This document shows positions 7,061-55,282 of a stretch of DNA of 64,000 bases, piece by piece. The notes under the pieces were generated by a model. The model was not told the DNA's origin and ran no database searches. It saw only the letters and a list, made by a program, of their open reading frames with translations. Within the stretch, counting starts at the first letter, position 1. The number at the start of each line of letters is the position of its first letter. The translations under genes and the position numbers were made by a program. The stretch covers positions 62,001-126,000 of the IMG/VR virus record IMGVR_UViG_3300010885_025649; one strand, 5' to 3'.

Positions 7061-8989
7061 TTAACTAACCTGTAGCTCATTATAAGCTTTAAATGTTAGT
7101 GGAAAGATAGGTTCAGCAAGTTGTTTAAATGCTATAGCATATTGACGAATCTCCCATTGTGCATCTTCAGATAAACGTAATCCTAAGAAATGTAATAAAG
7201 ATCTTAGATTAAAAGTGATATATAAACTTGTATAAGTGCAATGTGGTAAAACTCCTCTAGCTTGTTCTCTACACACACCATTAGCTAATAACTGCTCATA
7301 TATTTGATAAGCTTTATTAACTTGTTCTGCATATAATTCTCGTACTAACTCTTGATTAATATCCGGATTAGATACACTAGATTGTCTATTAGTTTTACCT
7401 TGCCCTCGAAACTCTTTAGGAATATAAGCTTGGTTCTTGACTACAATATATCTTGCACTTTCCTGATTAAATGAGTTATGAACCACAATTCCATTAGCTA
7501 CAAAATTATGCCAAGGCTTTGTAACACACAAATCATAAGTATCTTGTTCTCCCATATATTCAATAGCAGTAACTTTAACGGGATGAGCTTTAAGTTTCTG
7601 GCCTATACGTTTATTTACTCGCACTCTAAATAAAACAGGTTTATTCAAAGCTTGTTCTGCAAAAGCAATTTCATTTGCTTGAGATTTATGAACTTCCATA
7701 TGACAAGATTTACAAAGAGTAATAAGATTATCAATGTCATAAGCTTTAGTTATATCAGCAGCAACTGGAATTATATGATGTGCATGAAGTATACTAGAAC
7801 CTTGTCCGCATTGTTGACAAGTATAATCATACTTTTCATGAACGACTTTAGCATTTAGTCTAGTCCATGCACCAATATTAGCCCGTTCAGTCGTAATACC
7901 CCCACGCCAGAAATTGTTCTTCTCGCCTACCTTTTGTTTAGCTCTAATTGATCTAACTTGGCGAGCTTCTGGAGTTAAGTTAATCTTATAACCAGTCTTA
8001 CCTTTATTCCAAGGAGTCTGATTTAGGAAGAGTTTATCTATTTCTTGTTTAGAGAATTTTAGATCATGTATCTTAAGCCATTTCCTAATAGTATGATAAC
8101 TACACTCTGCCTCTGACGCCATTTGTGCAACAGAATATCCATCTTGTCTACATTTCTGCATCCAATCATAATCTCTATATAATCCGCTACCAACAACAAC
8201 ATTACCATTAACCATAAAATAAGAATCTTTAGTCATAAGTACTTCATCATTTATTACTTGTACTCCAAGGGCATGTCCCATAGTTTGCCAACCTTCTGAA
8301 GTATAAACTTTATGATTAGTAGTCATAGTTAAAGTTTTATTATCTTCTAATGTAACTTTATATACTGGCTGTATACCTTGATAAACTACATCTTCAACAT
8401 GACCAGTTGTAAATAAACCAGTACTTTCATCTAAAACCCGCAGCCGCATATTACTAATTCGTTTCTGCTTACTACGAAATCCTGCAGGTAATTTACTATT
8501 ACATACTCTTTGTACTGTGGCCCAACCCACCCCAGTTTTATTAGCTATTTGTCTATAGTTAATATTAGCTGCAGCCATTTCTTTAATTTGGTCTACAACT
8601 ATTTGTGGAGTAGTTAATGGATGTTTTTCTCCAATATGCCAATCTTCATATAATTCTTTAATTGTTTTATTTAAAGATTTAGAAGTTACACCAGTATTAT
8701 TAACAAATGTAACTATAGTATCACCAGTAACACAACAACCAATACGATGTCTTAACATCTCTTGAACTACATATAATGGAGCGGTAGCTCTAAAGGTTAA
8801 TAGATTGTGTTCCACAGGGCTAAAATGTTTGTTCTTAAGTAAATATTTAATTAATTTATAATTATCTTCTTGTGATCTAACTTTAAGATCATTAGCTAAA
8901 GAAACTCTAGCTGCGGCGCAAATCATCGCATCATCACCGACATGCTGAATTAATTCAACATGACTAATATTATCTAATAAAGGATCCAT
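7061..8989 (-). CDS. thyX: FAD-dependent thymidylate synthase ThyX, intein-interrupted
   Basis: AAARVS, HFSPVEH and the signature RHRIGC|…|SFNQESARY; C-terminal REQARGVLP and NLRSLLHFLGLR…AQWEIR. Confidence 0.95.
   Translation of the reverse strand: MDPLLDNISHVELIQHVGDDAMICAAARVSLANDLKVRSQEDNYKLIKYLLKNKHFSPVEHNLLTFRATAPLYVVQEMLRHRIGCCVTGDTIVTFVNNTGVTSKSLNKTIKELYEDWHIGEKHPLTTPQIVVDQIKEMAAANINYRQIANKTGVGWATVQRVCNSKLPAGFRSKQKRISNMRLRVLDESTGLFTTGHVEDVVYQGIQPVYKVTLEDNKTLTMTTNHKVYTSEGWQTMGHALGVQVINDEVLMTKDSYFMVNGNVVVGSGLYRDYDWMQKCRQDGYSVAQMASEAECSYHTIRKWLKIHDLKFSKQEIDKLFLNQTPWNKGKTGYKINLTPEARQVRSIRAKQKVGEKNNFWRGGITTERANIGAWTRLNAKVVHEKYDYTCQQCGQGSSILHAHHIIPVAADITKAYDIDNLITLCKSCHMEVHKSQANEIAFAEQALNKPVLFRVRVNKRIGQKLKAHPVKVTAIEYMGEQDTYDLCVTKPWHNFVANGIVVHNSFNQESARYIVVKNQAYIPKEFRGQGKTNRQSSVSNPDINQELVRELYAEQVNKAYQIYEQLLANGVCREQARGVLPHCTYTSLYITFNLRSLLHFLGLRLSEDAQWEIRQYAIAFKQLAEPIFPLTFKAYNELQVS
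7475..8734 (-). mobile_element. Intein (420 aa) with HNH homing endonuclease
   Basis: Begins CVTGDT, block B LTMTTNHKVYT, ends YDL…HNFVANGIVVHN with +1 Ser. Central CQQCG…HAHHIIP…NLITLCKSCH plus PWNKGK motif and HTH-like segments. Confidence 0.92.
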
Positions 8990-23732: not shown

Positions 23733-23821
23733 TGGGAGTGTAGGGAATCGAACCCTAACACGGGGCCAGTCCAGCCCACTTGAGGATATAAATCTCACGA
23801 TGCTCCATACATCACACTCCC
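23733..23821 (-). tRNA. Class II (Leu-like body) tRNA with UAU anticodon, nested in the outer tRNA
   Basis: GGGAGTG/CACTCCC-A73, loop TTTATAT, about 22-nt V-arm, T-arm TAGGG-TTCGATT-CCCTA; one A-C mismatch at the stem base. Confidence 0.7.
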
Positions 23822-26961: not shown

Positions 26962-28197
26962 TTAAACTCCTTGCTGTTGTTTTAACTGTTGCACTCGGTT
27001 ACATAACCAAGCATAGGCTTCAGCTTGATTAGTAATATAACCTTCAAGTACTAACTCATGTACTTCATCAATTATCTTCTTATAAATAGGCCCAGGAATA
27101 ACACCTCGCACTTGTAAATCCCGGCCTTGAATAAGATAAGGTAATTTATTATCTAGCACACCTGCTTTTTGTGCAAATTGCAAACAAGCATGAAGAGTAA
27201 TACCAGTAATAGCAAAATAGAAATCACATAAGATTCTTATATTAATAGACTTTAATTTGTGAGCTAATTGCCTAACCTTACTAATAGTGTCACAATCTTC
27301 AATAGCTTTATAGTAAAGGTATAATTCCAATGCAGGTTCTTCAATACGCCCGGTATTACAACTAAGAGTATTAAGTCTCCGGCTACCATAATAAGTATGA
27401 ACAACAACTGCAACCATAAATGCATGTTCATGTGCAGTTTTAGAAGCAACTTGTTTAGCCCGCTGTAAAATTATAGCCGGCTCATCTTCATACTTACCCT
27501 CAAACCAATACTTAAACCAGCCTACATCAGATAAGAACTTTAGGCCAAGCTCAGGATGATCACCTTTAACAAGCAACTTCTGGAACTCACCGCCAATTCT
27601 CTCCATAGAAAGGTCATTAGGGTTTAAGGATTTACACATCTCGATAGTAGCTGGATCTACAATCTGCAGATTAAAGCGAGAGATAAATTGCGCTCCGCGC
27701 AGAACCCGCAAGGGATCTTCTGCAAAAGCCGGTCCTACATGGCGTAGAATACCAGCTCGTAAATCTGCTCTACCATTATAAGGATCTAGGAATTCCCCAG
27801 TCACAAGATTAAGACCAATGGCATTAATAGTAAAGTCTCTTCTGGATGCACCTTCAGCAAAGGTCATGTTAGAATCGCCTTGAATAACAAAGCTGCGATG
27901 TTTATCACCAACTTTAGATTCACGACGAGGGAGAGAAACCTCAAGATCATTAACACTATATACTTGGAACTGTGCCCCTAATAGTTTAGGCTCCGAAGCT
28001 TTTACAGTCTCAGCATACCGATATAGTATATGATGTAGCTTCTCCGCTTCAATTCCATATACTTCAATATCTAAATCTTTAGGAGTAATACCCAAAAGCA
28101 TATCTCTAACAAAGCCACCAACTGCATAGACTTTAGCAGTGGGAACAAAGTTAATGACAAACTGAGCAAAGTTGTGGCCTTTCTGTATTAGTTCCAT
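26962..28197 (-). CDS. tRNA nucleotidyltransferase (CCA-adding enzyme, class II)
   Basis: VGGFVRDMLLG…DLDIEV, SRRDFTINAI, DPYNGRADL, FAEDPLRVLRGAQF, GRDL. Confidence 0.92.
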   Translation of the reverse strand: MELIQKGHNFAQFVINFVPTAKVYAVGGFVRDMLLGITPKDLDIEVYGIEAEKLHHILYRYAETVKASEPKLLGAQFQVYSVNDLEVSLPRRESKVGDKHRSFVIQGDSNMTFAEGASRRDFTINAIGLNLVTGEFLDPYNGRADLRAGILRHVGPAFAEDPLRVLRGAQFISRFNLQIVDPATIEMCKSLNPNDLSMERIGGEFQKLLVKGDHPELGLKFLSDVGWFKYWFEGKYEDEPAIILQRAKQVASKTAHEHAFMVAVVVHTYYGSRRLNTLSCNTGRIEEPALELYLYYKAIEDCDTISKVRQLAHKLKSINIRILCDFYFAITGITLHACLQFAQKAGVLDNKLPYLIQGRDLQVRGVIPGPIYKKIIDEVHELVLEGYITNQAEAYAWLCNRVQQLKQQQGV

Positions 28198-30325: not shown

Positions 30326-30976
30326 TCAAGTTAATAATGCTTCTAGCAATTCCGGATCAATAGGTAATCTTCTAAGATTAGGAACTAGTAATTCATTCAT
30401 CCAATGTGCATGAGTGGTAACATGATTAGCGCGGACATATTTACCCACACTAGTACTAAACTCATCCATAAAGAAAGCTTCTCTTAATCTAACTACATAA
30501 CCTTCACATAAATCTCCATTAACTATATGTAGCGGCTGGAAAGAATTATCCCATATACCTTCATAAAGAACAGGTACAGTAGGCAATCCAAAGTAATTAC
30601 ACCAAGTAACTACATCATCCCAACTTAAACATTCATCATCTTCCCAAATATTAAATACTTGGAAATACGCTATTAAGTTCTTGTAATAAATACTATGTTT
30701 AGCATATAGATTCTCCCCACAAATCCGCATATTTGTGGGGATATCAAAGGAGAATAAACTATGTAATCTACTTACAAAGGTTCTACTTTTATGATAGGGA
30801 GAATCTATAGATCTAGCATGTAAACCATTAGTATACATAGTAGTATTCTCCCCATCCATCTTCGCAGTAATAACTACTTCTTTACCTTCAAAGGGATTAA
30901 AGGTTAATCTTTTATCATCTGAAGTAGCCCCTGGAGAATCGGGTAAATGTAATGTACGAGGATATTTAGTGGCCAT
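30326..30976 (-). CDS. ATP-dependent RNA ligase (Rnl2-like)
   Basis: KYPRTLHLP.SPG.TSDDK, KMDGENTT, ICGENLYAKHSI, EGYVVR, KYVR; start MATKYP at 30976. Confidence 0.85.
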   Translation of the reverse strand: MATKYPRTLHLPDSPGATSDDKRLTFNPFEGKEVVITAKMDGENTTMYTNGLHARSIDSPYHKSRTFVSRLHSLFSFDIPTNMRICGENLYAKHSIYYKNLIAYFQVFNIWEDDECLSWDDVVTWCNYFGLPTVPVLYEGIWDNSFQPLHIVNGDLCEGYVVRLREAFFMDEFSTSVGKYVRANHVTTHAHWMNELLVPNLRRLPIDPELLEALLT

Positions 30977-31055
30977 ATTTACTTTAGCTCTGATAAGTTT
31001 ACTTATATAATCTAGTAAGTTAAACATAAGAATTATACGAGGCTTTTGTCAAGTG

Positions 31056-31437: not shown

Positions 31438-32740
31438 TGGGTCTAAAGCCCCGTCCCTTTAGGGCGGCTTTTTATCCTCGTTCGTGCTATCATAAGAACA
31501 GGAGGAAACAATGATTGTCTTTGAGTTCAAAACCTACGGCAAAGCAAGCCAATTCACTGCGATTGATGAGGCTATCCGAACGATGCAATTCATTCGGAAC
31601 AAGTCTATTCGTTTGTGGATGGACGGCCAAGCTAAATCTTGGGTAGAACTCTCCCGTCATTGTGCCCTGCTTGCTAAAGAGTTTGAGTTTGCCAACAAGC
31701 TCAACTCTATGGCTAGACAAGCTGCTGCCGAACGCGCATGGGCTAGTATCTCCCGATTCTACGACAACTGTAAAAGCAAAGTACCCGGTAAGAAAGGGTA
31801 CCCTACTTTTCAGAAAGACTGTAGAAGTGTTGAGTACAAAACCTCTGGTTGGAAGCTATCAGAAGACCGGAAAAGAATAACCTTCACCGACAAGATTGGC
31901 ATTGGTTGTTTGAAGTTAAAAGGCACCCGTGACTTAAACTTCTACGCCCCAGAGCAAATCAAAAGGGTGCGGTTAGTCAAACGTGCGGACGGATACTACG
32001 CGCAGTTCTGTGTCTCAGTAGATAGGTCTGAAGAACTAGAGCCAACAGGAAGTGCAGTTGGTTTGGATGTAGGGCTTAAAGAGTTCTACACCGACTCCAA
32101 TAACCAAACTGTTGATAACCCTCGCTTTCTAAGGACTGGTGAGAAAGCTATAAAGCAGACTCAGCGCAGAGTATCTAAGAAAGTAAAAGGCTCAAATAAT
32201 CGACACAAGGCCAAGAAGACACTAGGCAAACGCCACCTTAAGGTAAGTAGGCAACGCAGGGACTTTGCAATCAAGACTGCAAGGTGCGTAATCAGGTCAA
32301 ACGACCTAGTAGCTTATGAAGACTTAAGGATTAAGAACATGGTGAAGAACCATTGTTTGGCTAAGTCAATAAACGATGCCTCTTGGTACATGTTCCGTCA
32401 GTGGTTGGAGTACTTCGGCAAGATATTTGGCAAGGTAACAATAGCAGTACCAGCAGCCAGAACAAGTCAAGAATGCTCAAACTGTGGGGCTATTGTTGTC
32501 AAGTCATTATCCACTAGGACTCACGCTTGTAAGTGCGGGTGCGTGTTGGATAGAGACCACAACGCAGCGATTAACATTTTGATGAGAGGATTGGGTACCG
32601 CAGGGCATGTGGGAACCTTTGCGCTAGACGCAAGAATCGCTTGGGGAGACACGACCTCTACTCTGGTTGGAGCAATCCTGCCCGTGCAAGCCGTCTCGTA
32701 GAACCAAGAATCCCCGCACCTTTAGGTCGGGGAGTGTCAA
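31438..32740 (+). mobile_element. IS200/IS605-family (IS1341-type, TnpB-only) element
   Basis: Left hairpin AAAGCCCCGTCCCTTTAGGGCGGCTTT; right hairpin CCCCGCACCTTTAGGTCGGGG ending GTGTCAA; no tnpA; higher GC. Left boundary +/-3 nt. Confidence 0.85.
31511..32701 (+). CDS. tnpB: RNA-guided endonuclease TnpB
   Basis: RuvC-I GLDVGLKEF, RuvC-II AYEDL, Zn finger CSNCG…CKCG, RuvC-III DRDHNAAIN. Confidence 0.95.
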   Translation: MIVFEFKTYGKASQFTAIDEAIRTMQFIRNKSIRLWMDGQAKSWVELSRHCALLAKEFEFANKLNSMARQAAAERAWASISRFYDNCKSKVPGKKGYPTFQKDCRSVEYKTSGWKLSEDRKRITFTDKIGIGCLKLKGTRDLNFYAPEQIKRVRLVKRADGYYAQFCVSVDRSEELEPTGSAVGLDVGLKEFYTDSNNQTVDNPRFLRTGEKAIKQTQRRVSKKVKGSNNRHKAKKTLGKRHLKVSRQRRDFAIKTARCVIRSNDLVAYEDLRIKNMVKNHCLAKSINDASWYMFRQWLEYFGKIFGKVTIAVPAARTSQECSNCGAIVVKSLSTRTHACKCGCVLDRDHNAAINILMRGLGTAGHVGTFALDARIAWGDTTSTLVGAILPVQAVS

Positions 32741-32813: not shown

Positions 32814-33779
32814 CTAAACTAGCCTAATAATATCTTTAGATCTATTAAGAAAGTGATCTGCAAATAAACGATTAACTAATATAATATCAGGAGTAATAAT
32901 ATCAAAACTAGGACCGGGTGCATCTTCTTCAAGCCCGCTATCAAATTTACCAAATACAAACATATCTGGAGTAATAATAAGTTCCTTTCTCTTATAAAAT
33001 AAGAGAGAATATGCGGTTCGGGCTGAGCAACCAAACACATCCGCCACATAATTATAATAATCTACTAAAGATAATTCATAACCTTCAGGAGTTTTCCTAA
33101 CTATTTTAACTTCCGGAATACCCATAACCTTTAATTCAATAGTATCATCTCGAAGTAATACAACTGTACCTACAAAGTCAACACAATTATAATAAAGATG
33201 ATGCCCAAGTGCGGGTAAGAATAATTTAGCTAATATAACTTTAGTAAATTTATGCGAGGGTTTAAAGATACCCACACAAGTAAGATTAGATGCAATAACA
33301 GAACTATTATCAAAGCATTCAGAAAAGAGATAGTTTAATTCTTCACTTTTTAAAGCCAGATTAAATAACTTTATATTAGGAAATGTAATACTTAATTGAT
33401 TATCAAATAAGTTAACCTTAACGACATCTCCTTCAGGTAACTTAGTAGGATCTACTGGTAAGTTATGCGCAAAGGCTAATCGATATGCTTCAAATAGCGG
33501 GTGCTCTACCTGAAATAGTTCTAAGGGAATAGGGATTTGTGCAACACCCTTAACCATAACATAGACGTTATACTGACTATTAACTTGAAGATATATAAGA
33601 TCAGTTATCCCCGGTGCATTTTCTACATTACTGCTAATCTGTTCACCTAAATATTCCATGAATACATTATATTTAGCTTTAAATTTATAGAGAATAACAT
33701 CAACATCTTTAGTAGCCAACCACGCTTTAAACAAATCAACTTGTAACAATTCAACAATTTGCTCAATTAAGTCTTTCAT
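32814..33779 (-). CDS. Hypothetical protein
   Basis: AAGGA RBS, start MKDLIEQ at 33779. Confidence 0.55.
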   Translation of the reverse strand: MKDLIEQIVELLQVDLFKAWLATKDVDVILYKFKAKYNVFMEYLGEQISSNVENAPGITDLIYLQVNSQYNVYVMVKGVAQIPIPLELFQVEHPLFEAYRLAFAHNLPVDPTKLPEGDVVKVNLFDNQLSITFPNIKLFNLALKSEELNYLFSECFDNSSVIASNLTCVGIFKPSHKFTKVILAKLFLPALGHHLYYNCVDFVGTVVLLRDDTIELKVMGIPEVKIVRKTPEGYELSLVDYYNYVADVFGCSARTAYSLLFYKRKELIITPDMFVFGKFDSGLEEDAPGPSFDIITPDIILVNRLFADHFLNRSKDIIRLV

Positions 33780-33787
33780 GGATTCCT

Positions 33788-34120
33788 TCAGGAGTTTGTG
33801 GTTTGTATTAACTGGATATACTTTAGAAGTAATCCCGCAGTAACATCTTCCCAACCTTTACTAATCATTAGATTGAGTTCAATCAAATCTTTATCTAATT
33901 CTGGATCAAAGTTTTCCACAATAAAAGTATTTTTATCGTATGCCCAAACTGCATACCAATTTATATTTACAGTAAGAGTTCCAAGTTCTCTAACTTCTCT
34001 AAGATAAGTTACTAAAGGATTATCTTCGCCCACAAAGGGTCTACCTAACTTAAACTTAGGAGGTTTAGTAGCTAACCAAGATTTAATAAGTTCTAACTGC
34101 AGAGCAGGTTTGAATGACAT
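33788..34120 (-). CDS. Hypothetical protein
   Basis: AGGAG RBS. Confidence 0.5.
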   Translation of the reverse strand: MSFKPALQLELIKSWLATKPPKFKLGRPFVGEDNPLVTYLREVRELGTLTVNINWYAVWAYDKNTFIVENFDPELDKDLIELNLMISKGWEDVTAGLLLKYIQLIQTTNS

Positions 34121-34195: not shown

Positions 34196-34217
34196 ACAAA
34201 AGCCCCCGTAAGGGGGC
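34196..34217 (-). terminator. Intrinsic terminator ending the tmRNA transcript
   Basis: GCCCCC-TTAC-GGGGGC-TTTT. Confidence 0.8.
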
Positions 34218-34266
34218 CGATGTCTAACTAGTTGGGTAACAAGGCTAGTTAGCAACCCCGCTCAGT

Positions 34267-34317
34267 TTACGCAGCTACAAGAGCGCGCTTACGAGAGAAA
34301 GGATAAATGTTATTGAC
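34267..34317 (-). other. tmRNA tag reading frame (A)VNNIYPFSRKRALVAA*
   Basis: Direct translation; resembles cyanobacterial ANNIV.F.R..AA tags. Confidence 0.9.
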
Positions 34318-34417
34318 CTTTATTTTGTTTGTGTTTCTTCGCTTACACTGCGTTCAGTGGTACTCTTTCCCAATCATGTCGAAACCTGTATATCCCCGAG
34401 TAGTGGAGATAAGGGGA

Positions 34418-34698
34418 CACGTTACCCCCAGTTTTCACTGAGGCGTGGACTATTCCTTCAACCAAATGCGTGTCTTTGGTTGCCAAGCATTTAAAGCATT
34501 ACTGCTTTCCTAGTCACACTTAAAGTTAGACAAAGCTAATCACGCTCGAAGTGCTCTATGAGTCTCTAGACCATCGTTACCATCACTGGTAGTTTTGGTA
34601 CGGTGTTAACATGTCTGGTTACCCAGATTTAGTCTTCGCCGTTTGAGCTTGGTTTACATTCAACCATTACTGATTGAAGCGACTAACTCTTTCGAGTA
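34418..34698 (-). ncRNA. Group I intron (281 nt, ORF-less) in the tmRNA T-loop
   Basis: Exon …TTCGAU| with P1 U-G pair; P3 GCTC/GAGC; R GAGACT; S GAAGGAATAGTCC; P9 GAAA hairpin; terminal G then TCCCCT. Confidence 0.9.
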
Positions 34699-34871
34699 AT
34701 CGAACCCCTGTCCAGTCATAGTACTCAGTACCACCTAGTCCTCTTCTTAATAAGATCTGTTGAGAACAGTTAGACCCACCGTTATAAGGCCACGGACACG
34801 GGCGCCGAAGATTAAACTATCAGGGCCAGGACGAACCTTGGCCCAACAGCTACAAAGCCTTTGCTTTGTAT

Positions 34872-34990: not shown

Positions 34991-35259
34991 CTCCTCGAAA
35001 AGGATTCGAACCTTTGACCAGTCGATTACTTTACCACTACGGTTTTCACCGCCCTTTCAGTTTGTGGTCTGGACTTTCTCTTCATCCTATTTCTAAGAGC
35101 ACTCTATAAAGTCTCTACACTTGCCCGATCTTACGACCTGCTAGCTCGGGATTGGCATTTTAAAGCTTTCCCCGATTTAGGAGTGTTTTCATCTATTCAT
35201 TTCTAAATAGCGCTGCTATCATTTTACAGTCGACCGCTCTACCACTGAGCTACCGAGGA
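34991..35259 (-). tRNA. tRNA-Asn(GTT), intron-containing
   Basis: Exon 1 35226-35259 ends GTCGA-CTGT; exon 2 34991-35028 begins TAA-TCGAC; spliced loop CTGTTAA; TCCTCGG/TCGAGGA-G73. Confidence 0.92.
35029..35225 (-). ncRNA. Group I intron (197 nt) between anticodon positions 35 and 36
   Basis: P1 CUGU/GCAG with U-G; P3 CACTC/GAGTG; P4 TCGGG/CCCGA; P7 GACTTT/AAAGTC; GAAA P9; terminal G. Confidence 0.92.
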
Positions 35260-52863: not shown

Positions 52864-52949
52864 CGGGGAGCTGGTAGAATCGAACTCCAAGCGCTTCCGC
52901 GCTCCATCCGCTTTCAAGGCGGTGCAGATCCCAGATCTGATAACTCCCC
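52864..52949 (-). tRNA. tRNA-Ser(TGA) with long D-stem and bulged T-stem
   Basis: GGGGAGT/GCTCCCC-G73; D-stem CAGATC/GATCTG; ACCGC-CTTGAAA-GCGG; V-arm. Confidence 0.8.
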
Positions 52950-52958
52950 AATCACCAA

Positions 52959-53047
52959 AGGAAAGCCTGGGATTCGAACCCAGGGGAGCCTCTCGGCCCC
53001 GACACTTTAGTAGAATGTTGCAATCGGCCATGCTCTGCCAGCTTTCC
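52959..53047 (-). tRNA. tRNA-Ser-type body with ACT anticodon
   Basis: GGAAAGC/GCTTTCC; ACATT-CTACTAA-AGTGT; long V-arm. Confidence 0.8.
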
Positions 53048-53330
53048 CTATACTTTTATTATAACATATCTTTACAGCGCTGTTGAATCTCAGAATCTAA
53101 AAGAATTTAATTCTTCCTGACTAACACCTATCAACTCTTGTTCAATTAATAAACTTAATTTATTCATAAGACCTCCTAAGGTTTGATCTCTTGTAAGTAT
53201 TGAACAGCACGCATAATAGTACAACCTAATATAGCTTTTAATTGTATAGCCGCTTCTAAAACATTCATTGATCACCTATAGTTTGTGTAATTGGAGAGCG
53301 GTGTACTTTGGTAGGTGAGCCGCTTTCCTT

Positions 53331-53394: not shown

Positions 53395-54657
53395 GTGCGT
53401 CTTACTCACCAGTACCGAATTAAGCCCTCACCAGAACAGGAAGCCTTGATGCTTCACTGGCTAGAGCTTTTACGTCAGCACTGGAATTATGCACTAGGTC
53501 AGCGTTTGGACTACCTACGTCGTACCCGTAGCCCGATTGACCGTTGTTCCTTGCGTAGTTGCCCGATTGGTGAGATTCCGGAACGACCCAACTACTACAC
53601 TCAGGCTAGAGACCTAAAGCAAACCAAGGCTCTATTCCCCGAGTACAAGGATATTTACCTAGAGGTGCAGCAACAGAACCTCATCCGCTTGGATAAGGCT
53701 TGGGATAGGTGGACTAAACCTGATGCCACAGGGAAGAGAGCAGGACGACCCCAGTTCAAGAAAACTGATGAGCTTCGTTCTTTTACTTTCCCCCGTGTGA
53801 ACTGCCCTAAAGCCGGGGTGCATCTCTTAGGTGAGGTGATAAAGTTCTCTAAAATCGGTGTGATGCCCGTTATCCTGCATCGTCCGATTCCTGAAGGGTT
53901 TGTCATCAAGACCGCTACGGTGGTTCACAAAGTAGACGGTTGGTTTGTTTCTCTGAGCCTGGAAGATACGAGCATCCCCGCTCCAATGCCCTGTGAGGAG
54001 GTCAAGACAGCAGTAGGTGTGGATGTTGGGCTAAAGGAGTTCCTTACTACTTCTGAGGGTGATGCAGTTGCGATACAGCACATCTACCGCAAGGCTCAGA
54101 AGCGTTTAGCCCGTCAGCAGCGCAAGTTAGCCCGTCAACAAAAGGGGAGCAAGAATGCAGTAAAGCAGAAGAAACGGGTAGCCCTGGTACATCAACGCAT
54201 CCAAAGACAGCGTGAGAACTTCCACTACAACACGGCGCATGACTTGTGCAGCAAGTACGACTTGATAGCGGTGGAAGACCTGAACATCAAGGGTTTGGCT
54301 AGAACCCGGCTAGCTAAGTCAATCCTAGATGCAGCTTGGGGAGCGTTCCTACAAAAACTAGAAGCAGTGGCGGTAAAACGCGGCAAGCTAGTCATAAAAG
54401 TCAATCCTTGGGGAACAAGTCAGGATTGCTCGGAGTGTGGGACAAAGGTTCCTAAGACCCTCAGCATCCGTACTCATGAATGTCCGAAGTGTGGGCTAGA
54501 GTTAGACCGGGATGTGAATGCAGCTCGGAATATCCTAGAACGTGCGCTATGCACCGTGGGACTCACGGTGTCAGCCTGTGGAGGCTTAGGGGTTGCCCAG
54601 CCAATGAAGCAGGAAGTCTCTCTAGTGATAGGGAGAAGCCCCCGCCAGACCCGTTAG
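53395..54657 (+). CDS. tnpB: RNA-guided endonuclease TnpB
   Basis: HTH_OrfB start YRIKPSPEQ; GVDVGLK; AVEDL; CSECG…CPKCG; DRDVNAARN. Confidence 0.95.
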   Translation: MRLTHQYRIKPSPEQEALMLHWLELLRQHWNYALGQRLDYLRRTRSPIDRCSLRSCPIGEIPERPNYYTQARDLKQTKALFPEYKDIYLEVQQQNLIRLDKAWDRWTKPDATGKRAGRPQFKKTDELRSFTFPRVNCPKAGVHLLGEVIKFSKIGVMPVILHRPIPEGFVIKTATVVHKVDGWFVSLSLEDTSIPAPMPCEEVKTAVGVDVGLKEFLTTSEGDAVAIQHIYRKAQKRLARQQRKLARQQKGSKNAVKQKKRVALVHQRIQRQRENFHYNTAHDLCSKYDLIAVEDLNIKGLARTRLAKSILDAAWGAFLQKLEAVAVKRGKLVIKVNPWGTSQDCSECGTKVPKTLSIRTHECPKCGLELDRDVNAARNILERALCTVGLTVSACGGLGVAQPMKQEVSLVIGRSPRQTR

Positions 54658-54972: not shown

Positions 54973-55000
54973 CTTAAGCTCCAGATTGTGTGTTTGAAAG

Positions 55001-55074
55001 GGCGGTTGAAAGGAGTCGAACCTATACACCCCCTGTGCTATATACAGGTGCTCTACCACTGAGCTACAACCGCC
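55001..55074 (-). tRNA. His-type tRNA body with non-His anticodon loop (ATATAGC)
   Basis: G-1 GCGGTTG/CAACCGC C73; CCTGT/ACAGG stem intact. Confidence 0.7.
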
Positions 55075-55091
55075 ATGAATTAAACTAAAAG

Positions 55092-55164
55092 GGTGACATG
55101 AAAGGAATCGAACCAATATCTCCCGCGGATCATGCGGACGCACTACCTTTGTGCTACAGTCACC
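55092..55164 (-). tRNA. His-type tRNA-like gene with loop ATGATCC
   Basis: GGTGAC…GTCAC-C; D-stem GCAC/GTGC; TCCGC/GCGGG; imperfect T-stem. Confidence 0.55.
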
Positions 55165-55208
55165 ATGACTTTAACTAAACGTATCTCTCCTTGTTGTGAA
55201 TGTGTAAG

Positions 55209-55282
55209 GGTGTTTGGTGGGATTCGAACCCACGCCTCTCGCAAATCGGAAGCGAACGCTCTGCCGCTGAGCTACTAACACC
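55209..55282 (-). tRNA. His-type tRNA-like gene with 9-nt loop TTCCGATTT
   Basis: G-1 GTGTTAG/CAAACAC C73; intact D- and T-arms. Confidence 0.6.

What the first reader, a model, noticed from the sequence alone, without database searches (positions are those of the whole stretch)
34991..35259. Compact group I intron inside the anticodon (35/36) of tRNA-Asn
Seen: a 197-nt intron with clear P1, P3, P4, P7 and P9 splits G34-U35|U36. Established: classical bacterial tRNA group I introns are in Leu(UAA), fMet, Ile(CAU) and Arg(CCU) at other positions. An Asn 35/36 site is rare; I recall reports from CPR bacteria only, unverified. The cyanobacterial-typical Leu(UAA) tRNA here (50295) is intron-less. 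Two introns lie within 1 kb.
Basis: partly seen in the sequence, partly recalled or inferred. Interest (0 to 1): 0.65.

Follow-up and report, generated by a model that had tools for sequence, protein, structure and literature searches.

The report
Group I intron in phage tRNA-Asn
A large freshwater phage's only asparagine tRNA gene is split inside its anticodon by a small, probably self-splicing RNA intron; the call is right, but this kind of intron is common in phages and many bacteria, so it is a new member of a known class.

Summary
On the minus strand, 35259..34991 is a tRNA-Asn(GUU) gene split between U35 and U36 by a 197-nt group I intron (35225..35029).

Support for the intron call:
- ARAGORN calls it on the untouched window.
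- Rfam Intron_gpI matches at 41.4 bits, below the gathering score of 50.
- A covariance model built from 27 related introns, without this one, scores it 155 bits (E 4e-38).
- Across 46 homologous introns the proposed helices hold in 88% of cells, against 30-41% for slid controls. Compensatory changes occur in P2, P3, P4, P5, P6 and P9.
- P1 (CUGU/GCAG with the U35•G wobble) and P7 hardly vary.

The rarity claim fails. The site is the "Asn.4Ug" class of Williams' 2020 bioRxiv survey of bacterial tRNA introns. I verified it in 50 distinct viral-contig sequences and in 86 of the first 120 bacterial genome hits. About 45% of those are Patescibacteria; the rest span at least ten other groups.

The closest relatives are viral. 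Some carry an I-Ssp6803I-like PD-(D/E)XK homing endonuclease gene in P6; this copy has none.

Splicing is inferred, because no RNA data exist.

In passing: the neighbouring tmRNA gene is both circularly permuted and intron-split, a combination absent from the current tmRNA form list.

The parts
35226..35259 (-). tRNA-Asn 5' exon (tRNA positions 1-35; acceptor UCCUCGG, D arm, anticodon stem GUCGA, C32 U33 G34 U35)
   Evidence: ARAGORN -i. The 5' exon matches annotated tRNA-Asn genes of isolated phages at 88-90%. Other contigs in the source metagenomes match this exon and then continue as uninterrupted tRNA-Asn from exactly 35226/35225.
35029..35225 (-). Group I intron, 197 nt, no ORF, IC3-like architecture
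   Evidence: RF00028 at 41.4 bits. Leave-one-out CM R1 at 155.3 bits, E 4e-38. Covariation on 46 homologues. The MFE fold recovers P2, P4, P5, P6 and P9 independently.
35213..35229 (-). P1: exon C32-U35 (35229..35226) paired with the internal guide G10-G13 (35216..35213). U35•G10 is the wobble pair at the 5' splice site.
   Evidence: All four pairs are invariant in 46/46 homologues: CG, UA, GC, UG (helix 1).
35193..35210 (-). P2 hairpin, 7 bp with a GAAA tetraloop (intron nt 16-33)
   Evidence: 7 of 7 pairs show changes on both sides; 90% of cells are paired (helix 2).
35100..35185 (-). P3 (intron 41-45 with 122-126), enclosing P4 (51-56/75-80), P5 (60-61/70-71) and P6/P6a (81-107, GUAA loop)
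   Evidence: P3: 5 of 5 pairs compensatory, 93.5% paired. P4: 100% paired, 3 pairs compensatory. P5: 98% paired. Base of P6: 97% paired. P6a is variable across the family and is where relatives carry the endonuclease ORF.
35071..35115 (-). P7 pseudoknot (intron G111, G113-U116 with A151-C155, A112 bulged), the presumed guanosine-binding helix. It encloses P3' and P8 (128-141, GAAA loop) and J8/7.
   Evidence: P7 is paired in 100% of cells. 4 of 5 pairs are invariant and one shows GC/CG exchange (helix 9). P8 was not resolved by the MAFFT alignment (48% paired).
35033..35068 (-). P9 three-way junction: P9 (158-162/189-193), P9a (166-167/172-173, GAAA) and P9b (174-178/183-187, GAAA)
   Evidence: P9: 4 of 5 pairs compensatory. 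P9a: 2 of 2. P9b: 5 of 5, 91.5% paired (helices 12-14).
35029..35029 (-). Terminal guanosine (omega G, intron nt 197) before the 3' splice site
   Evidence: G is invariant at this column, followed by UAA, in all 46 homologues. Every intron my script verified ends in G; that was a search criterion, met together with full tRNA complementarity.
34991..35028 (-). tRNA-Asn 3' exon (U36 A37 A38, anticodon stem UCGAC, variable loop, T arm AAAGG-UUCGAAU-CCUUU, acceptor UCGAGGA, discriminator G73). CCA is not encoded.
   Evidence: ARAGORN -i cloverleaf. My exon finder gives 0 mismatches in the anticodon stem, T stem and acceptor stem.

Best explanation
This is a genuine group I intron without an endonuclease gene, of the type found in bacterial tRNA genes (IC3-like). 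It interrupts the phage's only tRNA-Asn(GUU) gene between anticodon nucleotides U35 and U36.

Proposed mechanism. The fold is supported by comparison; the chemistry is inferred from the established group I mechanism.
1. In the precursor, C32-U33-G34-U35 pairs with the internal guide GCAG to form P1, with U35•G10 marking the 5' splice site.
2. The P3-P9 core folds around the P7 guanosine site.
3. A free guanosine attacks after U35.
4. The terminal G197 then enters the same site, and the 3'-OH of U35 attacks after G197.
5. This joins U35 to U36 and restores the loop CU-GUU-AA. The flanking anticodon stem (GUCGA/UCGAC) holds the exons together; P10 is at most 2 bp.
6. The tRNA is then end-processed and given CCA. 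The phage encodes its own CCA-adding enzyme at 26962-28197.

Origin. The intron belongs to a mostly phage-borne lineage of the widespread 'Asn.4Ug' class. Other members of that lineage carry an I-Ssp6803I-like PD-(D/E)XK homing endonuclease gene in P6. This copy most likely descends from such a mobile intron, has lost the gene or never had it, and persists as a neutral passenger that must splice for the tRNA to work.
For: - Exons and site. In DNA run X1, which may be the window's own source sample, and in X2, other contigs match the 5' exon and then continue as intron-less tRNA-Asn from exactly the predicted splice site.
- Intron identity: RF00028 E 7.9e-9. The leave-one-out CM gives 155.3 bits, E 4e-38, full length.
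- Structure: 88.3% of cells paired against 29.5-40.7% when partners are slid. Covariation score 0.446 against 0.05-0.11. 37 of 53 pairs change on both sides. 0 of 500 shuffles reach the observed values on four of five measures. P1 and P7 hardly vary.
- Family: 50 distinct viral and 86 bacterial tRNA-Asn genes are split at the same bond, all with U-1 and omega G.
- Relatives carry a PF11645 ORF in P6 (E 6e-21 to 3e-30). It matches PDB 2ost (E 1.3e-8). Alignment A4 shows this copy has a short GNRA hairpin where that ORF sits.
- Need for the tRNA: it is the only tRNA-Asn among the phage's 14 tRNA genes. Asn makes up 6.5% of codons in long ORFs.
- The site is listed as Asn.4Ug in Williams 2020.
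Against: - There is no RNA evidence. No RNA run holds the locus, so neither splicing nor expression is shown.
- The Rfam score (41.4 bits) is below the curated gathering score of 50.
- P6a and P8 could not be confirmed by covariation in the MAFFT alignment (21-48% paired), probably through misalignment of variable loops.
- The z-score of the single-sequence fold is only -1.67.
- The one other copy of this exact locus, in IMGVR_UViG_3300009154_002711, is 99.94% identical over 10.5 kb. It adds no independent evolutionary support.
- Whether the host's own tRNA-Asn makes this gene dispensable is unknown.
Confidence: 0.88

Rival explanations
1. The intron is a decayed relic that no longer splices, so the phage tRNA-Asn gene is a pseudogene and the phage relies on host tRNA-Asn.
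For: There is no endonuclease gene and no RNA data. The Rfam score is below the gathering threshold. P10 is weak, at most 2 bp by inspection.
Against: - Every column that is invariant in the 46-member family is intact here, including P1, P7, J8/7 and omega G.
- All helices are canonical in this sequence.
- The leave-one-out model aligns it end to end at 155 bits.
- The tRNA exons have 0 stem mismatches.
Confidence: 0.06
2. The RNA is a group I intron but does not self-splice efficiently in vivo. It depends on a protein cofactor from the host or the phage, so tRNA-Asn maturation is conditional and could time translation during infection.
For: Some small group I introns need chaperones or high Mg2+ (general knowledge). 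The intron is very compact and P10 is weak. The locus sits in an island of RNA-processing genes: CCA-adding enzyme and RNA ligase.
Against: No candidate cofactor was identified. The closest classical relatives, the tRNA IC3 introns of Azoarcus and Anabaena, self-splice without protein (my knowledge; one search lists a 2026 Azoarcus pre-tRNA structure paper). Four GNRA tetraloops (L2, L6a, L8, L9b), plus a GAAA loop closing the 2-bp P9a, suggest self-sufficient tertiary packing.
Confidence: 0.1
3. The match is a chance resemblance, or the splice site lies elsewhere and gives a different anticodon, for example Thr GGU as ARAGORN labels some homologues.
For: ARAGORN places the boundary differently in several homologues (Thr ggt, Tyr gta).
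Against: - Only the 35/36 boundary gives both U-1 and omega G.
- It is the same in all 46 aligned homologues.
- It coincides with the homology break against uninterrupted tRNA-Asn genes.
- The exons carry the Asn-type acceptor stem and the G73 discriminator.
- The leave-one-out E-value is 4e-38.
Confidence: 0.01

Closest known systems
'Asn.4Ug' class of bacterial tRNA group I introns (K. P. Williams, bioRxiv 2020, doi 10.1101/2020.01.27.920355)
   Same: Same host gene (tRNA-Asn), same insertion point (after the 4th anticodon-loop nucleotide, that is 35/36), and same U-1 and omega G.
   Different: - That survey covered bacterial and archaeal genomes, not phages.
- Its seed Pam37.Asn.4Ug shows extra stems between P7 and P3' and after P2, which this intron lacks (read by eye; not compared by a tool).
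- Bacterial Asn introns that I fetched are only 47-58% identical to this one, against 68-71% for the closest viral ones.
Classical IC3 tRNA introns: tRNA-Leu(UAA) of cyanobacteria and plastids, tRNA-Ile(CAU) of Azoarcus, tRNA-Arg(CCU), tRNA-fMet
   Same: - Compact size of about 200-250 nt.
- P2 with a GAAA loop, no P5abc, and a P9 with GAAA hairpins.
- Shared core strings CAAUCCYGAGC and GURYAGAGACU. The pattern built from them also retrieved Leu(UAA) and Arg(CCU) introns.
- Location in the anticodon loop.
   Different: Different tRNA and different bond: Leu after nt 34, Arg and Ile2 after nt 36-37, fMet after nt 33 in Williams' numbering. The internal guide is GCAG, pairing with C32-U35 of a GUN anticodon loop.
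I-Ssp6803I-bearing tRNA-fMet intron of Synechocystis PCC 6803 (PD-(D/E)XK homing endonuclease; PDB 2OST by my knowledge)
   Same: Relatives of this intron (L135, L137, L144, and by ORF length L132) encode a 146-164 aa PF11645 protein that matches 2ost_A. This points to the same homing mechanism for the lineage.
   Different: The window's copy has no ORF. [quoted passage not shown]
tmRNA T-loop group I introns (PMC11915505)
   Same: The neighbouring tmRNA gene carries such an intron (34698..34418). It matches the Asn-intron model at 53.5 bits.
   Different: It is not a recent duplicate of the Asn intron: the pairwise alignment is poor outside the core motifs. It is 281 nt long, with different P2-P6 sequences.

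Membership tests
Group I intron (Rfam RF00028) | P1 helix whose last exon nucleotide is a U in a U•G wobble with the internal guide | tested here: met
   CUGU/GCAG with U35•G10, invariant in 46/46 homologues.
Group I intron (Rfam RF00028) | Terminal guanosine (omega G) at the 3' end of the intron | tested here: met
   G197 (window 35029), invariant across the alignment.
Group I intron (Rfam RF00028) | Conserved core P3-P4-P6 and P7-P3-P8 with the P7 pseudoknot, supported by covariation | tested here: met
   - P3: 5/5 pairs compensatory.
- P4: 100% paired.
- Base of P6: 97% paired.
- P7: 100% paired.
- P8 and P6a were not resolved in the MAFFT alignment.
Group I intron (Rfam RF00028) | Score at or above Rfam's gathering threshold (50 bits) | tested here: not met
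   The score is 41.4 bits. Williams 2020 notes that none of the Rfam seeds was bacterial and used cut-offs of 18-20 bits. A model built from the family itself gives 155 bits.
Group I intron (Rfam RF00028) | Guanosine-dependent self-splicing activity | not testable with these tools
   No RNA run holds the locus. A bench assay is needed.
Asn.4Ug tRNA intron class (Williams 2020) | Exons that make a tRNA-Asn(GUU) | tested here: met
   ARAGORN cloverleaf with G73. The 5' exon hits annotated phage tRNA-Asn genes.
Asn.4Ug tRNA intron class (Williams 2020) | Insertion after the fourth anticodon-loop nucleotide, with U-1 and omega G | tested here: met
   CU-GU|intron...G|U-AA.
Asn.4Ug tRNA intron class (Williams 2020) | Sequence homology to the preprint's seed Pam37.Asn.4Ug | not tested
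   The seed exists only as printed text with no reference, so it was not sent to any tool. By eye it has extra stems. Homology to 86 bacterial Asn-site introns fetched here is 47-58% identity.
Subgroup IC3 | Compact core without a P5abc extension or P7.1/P7.2, and core sequence shared with the classical tRNA introns | tested here: inconclusive
   The architecture fits, and the core pattern also retrieves Leu(UAA) and Arg(CCU) introns. No formal subgroup classifier was available.
Mobile (homing) group I intron | Intron-encoded homing endonuclease | tested here: not met
   The 197-nt intron is too short to hold an ORF of 50 aa or more, and none is listed there. Relatives carry a PD-(D/E)XK ORF in P6.

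The most novel reading that the evidence does not exclude
Phage-encoded tRNA genes may be a large and essentially undescribed reservoir of group I introns.
- One core pattern hit at least 118 viral contigs. ARAGORN places about 50 of those hits in the anticodon loops of more than ten tRNA species (boundaries approximate).
- The Asn 35/36 introns of phages form largely their own clade. Some members carry I-Ssp6803I-like endonucleases.
- Because the guide GCAG pairs only with C32-U35, which all GUN-anticodon tRNAs share, the same intron lineage could hop between Asn, Asp, Tyr and His genes and between phages and hosts.
- The window's intron would be one leaf of that network.
Probability: 0.4. 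Interest if true: 0.5.

Novelty: new member of a known kind. Interest (0 to 1): 0.3.

Why it matters
For annotation: this phage has 14 tRNA genes, not 13. ARAGORN without its intron option and Rfam at gathering thresholds both miss this gene. Phage tRNA counts, and codon-usage arguments built on them, are therefore too low wherever such introns occur.

For biology: the locus adds a clean, minimal (197 nt) ribozyme with many natural variants for structure-function work. It also shows that the Asn 35/36 intron class moves in phages, with PD-(D/E)XK homing endonucleases as the likely vehicle.

It does not open a new question by itself. The class and the mechanism are known.

Tried and rejected
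- Relatives of the phage: neighbouring-protein and intron-pattern searches found only the same phage again, 99.94% identical. They give no independent orthologous locus and no intron-less allele of this phage.
- RNA evidence: no RNA run holds the locus. The laid DNA contigs cannot show splicing. The single 'skips 59' joint at 35084/35144 comes from one short contig with 25 nt on its shorter side, at 80% likeness. I read it as another organism's intron, not a variant of this one.
- Isolated phages (INPHARED): there is no tRNA-Asn intron relative. The HTVC028P hit is a partial tRNA-Asn next to an integrase (an att-like site). The HTVC120P hit is an intron-like stretch between two capsid ORFs.
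- Literature: searches for 'group I intron' with 'tRNA-Asn', with phage and anticodon loop, and with 'phage tRNA' found nothing specific. The cyanobacterial tRNA paper PMC5733544 reports 22-49 nt 'group I introns', which are too short to be group I, so I did not use it.
- Recent duplication of the tmRNA intron: rejected.
- Host: rIIA-like, Dda-like and other proteins show it is a phage but not which host. The cyanobacterial-type permuted tmRNA is only a hint.
Exons were searched by reference only. One local script concatenated exons of loci already fetched, solely to compute pairwise identities.
- The tree has no support values and is used only descriptively.

Full report
**Context.** The window is bases 62001-126000 of a 212,497-bp IMG/VR virus record. 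It has 36% G+C and CheckV estimates it 91% complete. Its genes mark it as a large tailed phage:
- a Dda-like helicase;
- an ORF (7061-8989) matching both thymidylate synthase and HNH endonuclease families;
- a CCA-adding enzyme (26962-28197);
- an RNA ligase (30326-31027);
- an rIIA-like protein;
- nicotinamide phosphoribosyltransferase.

All its RNA genes lie on the minus strand in one island. Standard ARAGORN finds 13 tRNAs and no tRNA-Asn.

**The observation.** Read on the minus strand, 35259..35226 is a perfect tRNA 5' half ending in the anticodon stem GUCGA and the loop start C-U-G-U. Then 35028..34991 begins U-A-A-UCGAC and continues through a T arm and an acceptor strand complementary to the first seven bases, followed by discriminator G.
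- ARAGORN with introns allowed, run on the untouched window, reports tRNA-Asn(gtt) with a 197-nt intron at loop position 35-36.
- My own exon finder finds zero mismatches in the three stems.
- The 5' exon alone matches annotated tRNA-Asn genes of isolated phages at 88-90%.
- In the two DNA runs that hold the locus, contigs of other organisms match this 5' exon. From exactly 35226/35225 they continue as ...UAACCGAUUGGUC..GGUUCGAAUCC.., which is uninterrupted tRNA-Asn. The homology break therefore falls on the predicted 5' splice site.

**Is the insert a group I intron?**
- Rfam's Intron_gpI aligns 35230..35048 end to end at 41.4 bits. E is 7.9e-9 locally and 3e-10 per genome. That is below the curated 50-bit cut-off. 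Williams (2020) points out that this model has no bacterial seeds.
- By hand I placed these helices:

| Helix | Intron positions | Note |
|---|---|---|
| P1 | exon CUGU with G10-G13 | U35•G10 wobble at the splice site |
| P2 | 16-33 | GAAA loop |
| P3 | 41-45 / 122-126 | |
| P4 | 51-56 / 75-80 | |
| P5 | 60-61 / 70-71 | |
| P6 / P6a | 81-107 | GUAA loop |
| P7 | 111, 113-116 / 151-155 | A112 bulged |
| P8 | 128-141 | GAAA loop |
| P9 | 158-193 | three-way junction with two GAAA hairpins |
| omega G | 197 | |

- An unconstrained MFE fold recovers P2, P4, P5, P6 and P9.

**Related sequences.**
- A core pattern shared with classical tRNA introns hit at least 118 viral contigs. ARAGORN places about 50 of these hits in the anticodon loops of many tRNA species, with approximate boundaries.
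- A pattern specific to 'tRNA 5' half ending in CUGU plus guide GCAGC' hit 69 viral contigs. In 57 of them (50 distinct sequences) I could map a complete tRNA-Asn(GUU) split at the same bond. All have U-1, omega G and 3' loop UAA, and the introns are 183-624 nt long.
Of these, 86 are verified Asn 35/36 introns, and 6 are Asp(GUC) introns at the same bond.
- By record title, about 39 of the 86 are Patescibacteria. The others are Omnitrophota, Nitrospirota, Gamma- and Betaproteobacteria, Binatia, Planctomycetota, Clostridia, Chloroflexota and more. Some lie on megabase contigs.

**Covariation.** I aligned 46 viral Asn introns (A2) and imposed my structure.
- 88.3% of cells form standard pairs, against 29.5-40.7% when partners are slid.
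- The covariation score is 0.446, against 0.05-0.11 for the slid controls.
- 37 of 53 pairs change on both sides.
- P2 (7/7), P3 (5/5) and P9b (5/5) are fully compensatory.
- P1 is invariant and P7 nearly so, as expected for the splice-site helix and the guanosine site.
- P6a and P8 are not supported in this alignment. I attribute this to misaligned variable loops.

A covariance model built from 27 of these introns, without the window, scores the window 155.3 bits (E 4e-38) over its full length at 35233..35021.

**Lineage and mobility.**
- The nearest introns are viral: 68-71% identity, against 47-58% for bacterial ones.
- A FastTree tree, without support values, puts the window in a mostly viral clade beside L130.
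- Five viral relatives have introns of 579-624 nt, and four of them carry an ORF of 146-164 aa. The three I scanned belong to Pfam PF11645, a PD-(D/E)XK endonuclease family (E 6e-21 to 3e-30). One of them matches PDB 2ost, which by my knowledge is I-Ssp6803I, the homing endonuclease of the Synechocystis tRNA-fMet intron (see PMC3384342).
- Alignment A4 shows the ORF sits in P6. There the window and L130 have only a short GNRA hairpin, while the flanking core is nearly identical.
- The window's intron is thus an endonuclease-less member of a homing lineage.

**What is known.** Williams' preprint extends the four classical bacterial tRNA intron sites (Leu.3, Arg.5, fMet.2, Ile2.5; all IC3) to 21. 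Its seed alignment includes Pam37.Asn.4Ug, the same bond as here, and also Tyr.4Ug and Asp.4Ug. Lui et al. (PMC8172020) mention group I introns in CPR tRNAs. I found no paper on such introns in phage tRNA genes. The library searched is incomplete, so this is not proof of absence.

**Mechanism and limits.** The splicing chemistry is inferred from the family. No RNA data exist for this phage. The gene is probably needed: it is the only tRNA-Asn of the phage, and Asn makes up 6.5% of codons, mostly AAU.

**Handling note.** One local script concatenated exons only to compute identities.

**Verdict.** The feature is real and correctly read. It is a new member of a known class, and neither rare nor confined to CPR bacteria.

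Noticed in passing
window 34733..34202 (-); intron 34698..34418: The neighbouring tmRNA gene is circularly permuted. The T arm and acceptor 3' strand (34417..34404) come before the acceptor 5' strand GGGGAUA (34397..) and the tag frame ...VNNIYPFSRKRALVAA. The gene is also split in the T loop by a 281-nt group I intron. RF04321 scores 47.9 bits, cyano_tmRNA 48.8 bits and the Asn-intron model 53.5 bits. The 2025 tmRNA database lists standard, permuted and intron forms, with no permuted-plus-intron form (PMC11915505, Table 3).
   Followed up: partly
L005-L122 (viral contigs), e.g. L029, L035, L056, L082, L114: IC3-like group I introns sit in the anticodon loops of many phage-contig tRNA genes: Leu UAA, Arg CCU/UCU, Phe, Met, Lys, Thr, Gln, Ala and Tyr by ARAGORN -i. 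Boundaries and some isotypes are approximate.
   Followed up: partly
L135:7444-7896, L137:6073-6567, L144:238-678 (also L132): Long versions of the tRNA-Asn intron carry an I-Ssp6803I-like PD-(D/E)XK (PF11645) ORF inserted in P6. The literature describes this endonuclease family as mainly cyanobacterial.
   Followed up: partly
L220, L238, L242, L281, L290, L294 (Patescibacteria MAGs): tRNA-Asp(GUC) genes are split at the same 35/36 bond with the same GCAG guide. In the tree these introns nest among the Asn introns, which suggests switching between GUN-anticodon tRNAs.
   Followed up: partly
window 26962-28197 (-), 30326-31027 (-), 31511-32701 (+), 53395-54657 (+): The tRNA island also encodes a CCA-adding enzyme, an RNA ligase and two IS605/TnpB-type transposase-like ORFs. 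The tRNA-Asn gene lacks an encoded CCA.
   Followed up: no
window 7061-8989 (-): A 642-aa ORF combines a thymidylate-synthase-like C-terminus (residues 504-638) with an HNH endonuclease domain (about 345-470). It may be an intein, a fused homing endonuclease, or a mis-joined intron ORF.
   Followed up: no
window 23733-23821, 52865-53048, 55000-55281 (-): ARAGORN gives several tRNAs unusual anticodons (Ile tat, Ser act, Tyr ata). Rfam's tRNA-Sec model just reaches its threshold at 52865..52949. These may be suppressor, Ile2-like or mis-registered genes.
   Followed up: no
window 33958..33778 (-): A weak third match to the Asn-intron covariance model (15.2 bits, E 0.019) lies just downstream of the tmRNA gene. 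It is probably chance.
   Followed up: no
L308 (Pelagibacter phage HTVC120P, MH598807.1 19638-19771): A stretch 70% identical to the intron core lies between two ORFs that are both annotated 'capsid protein'. It looks like an unannotated group I intron splitting the capsid gene.
   Followed up: no
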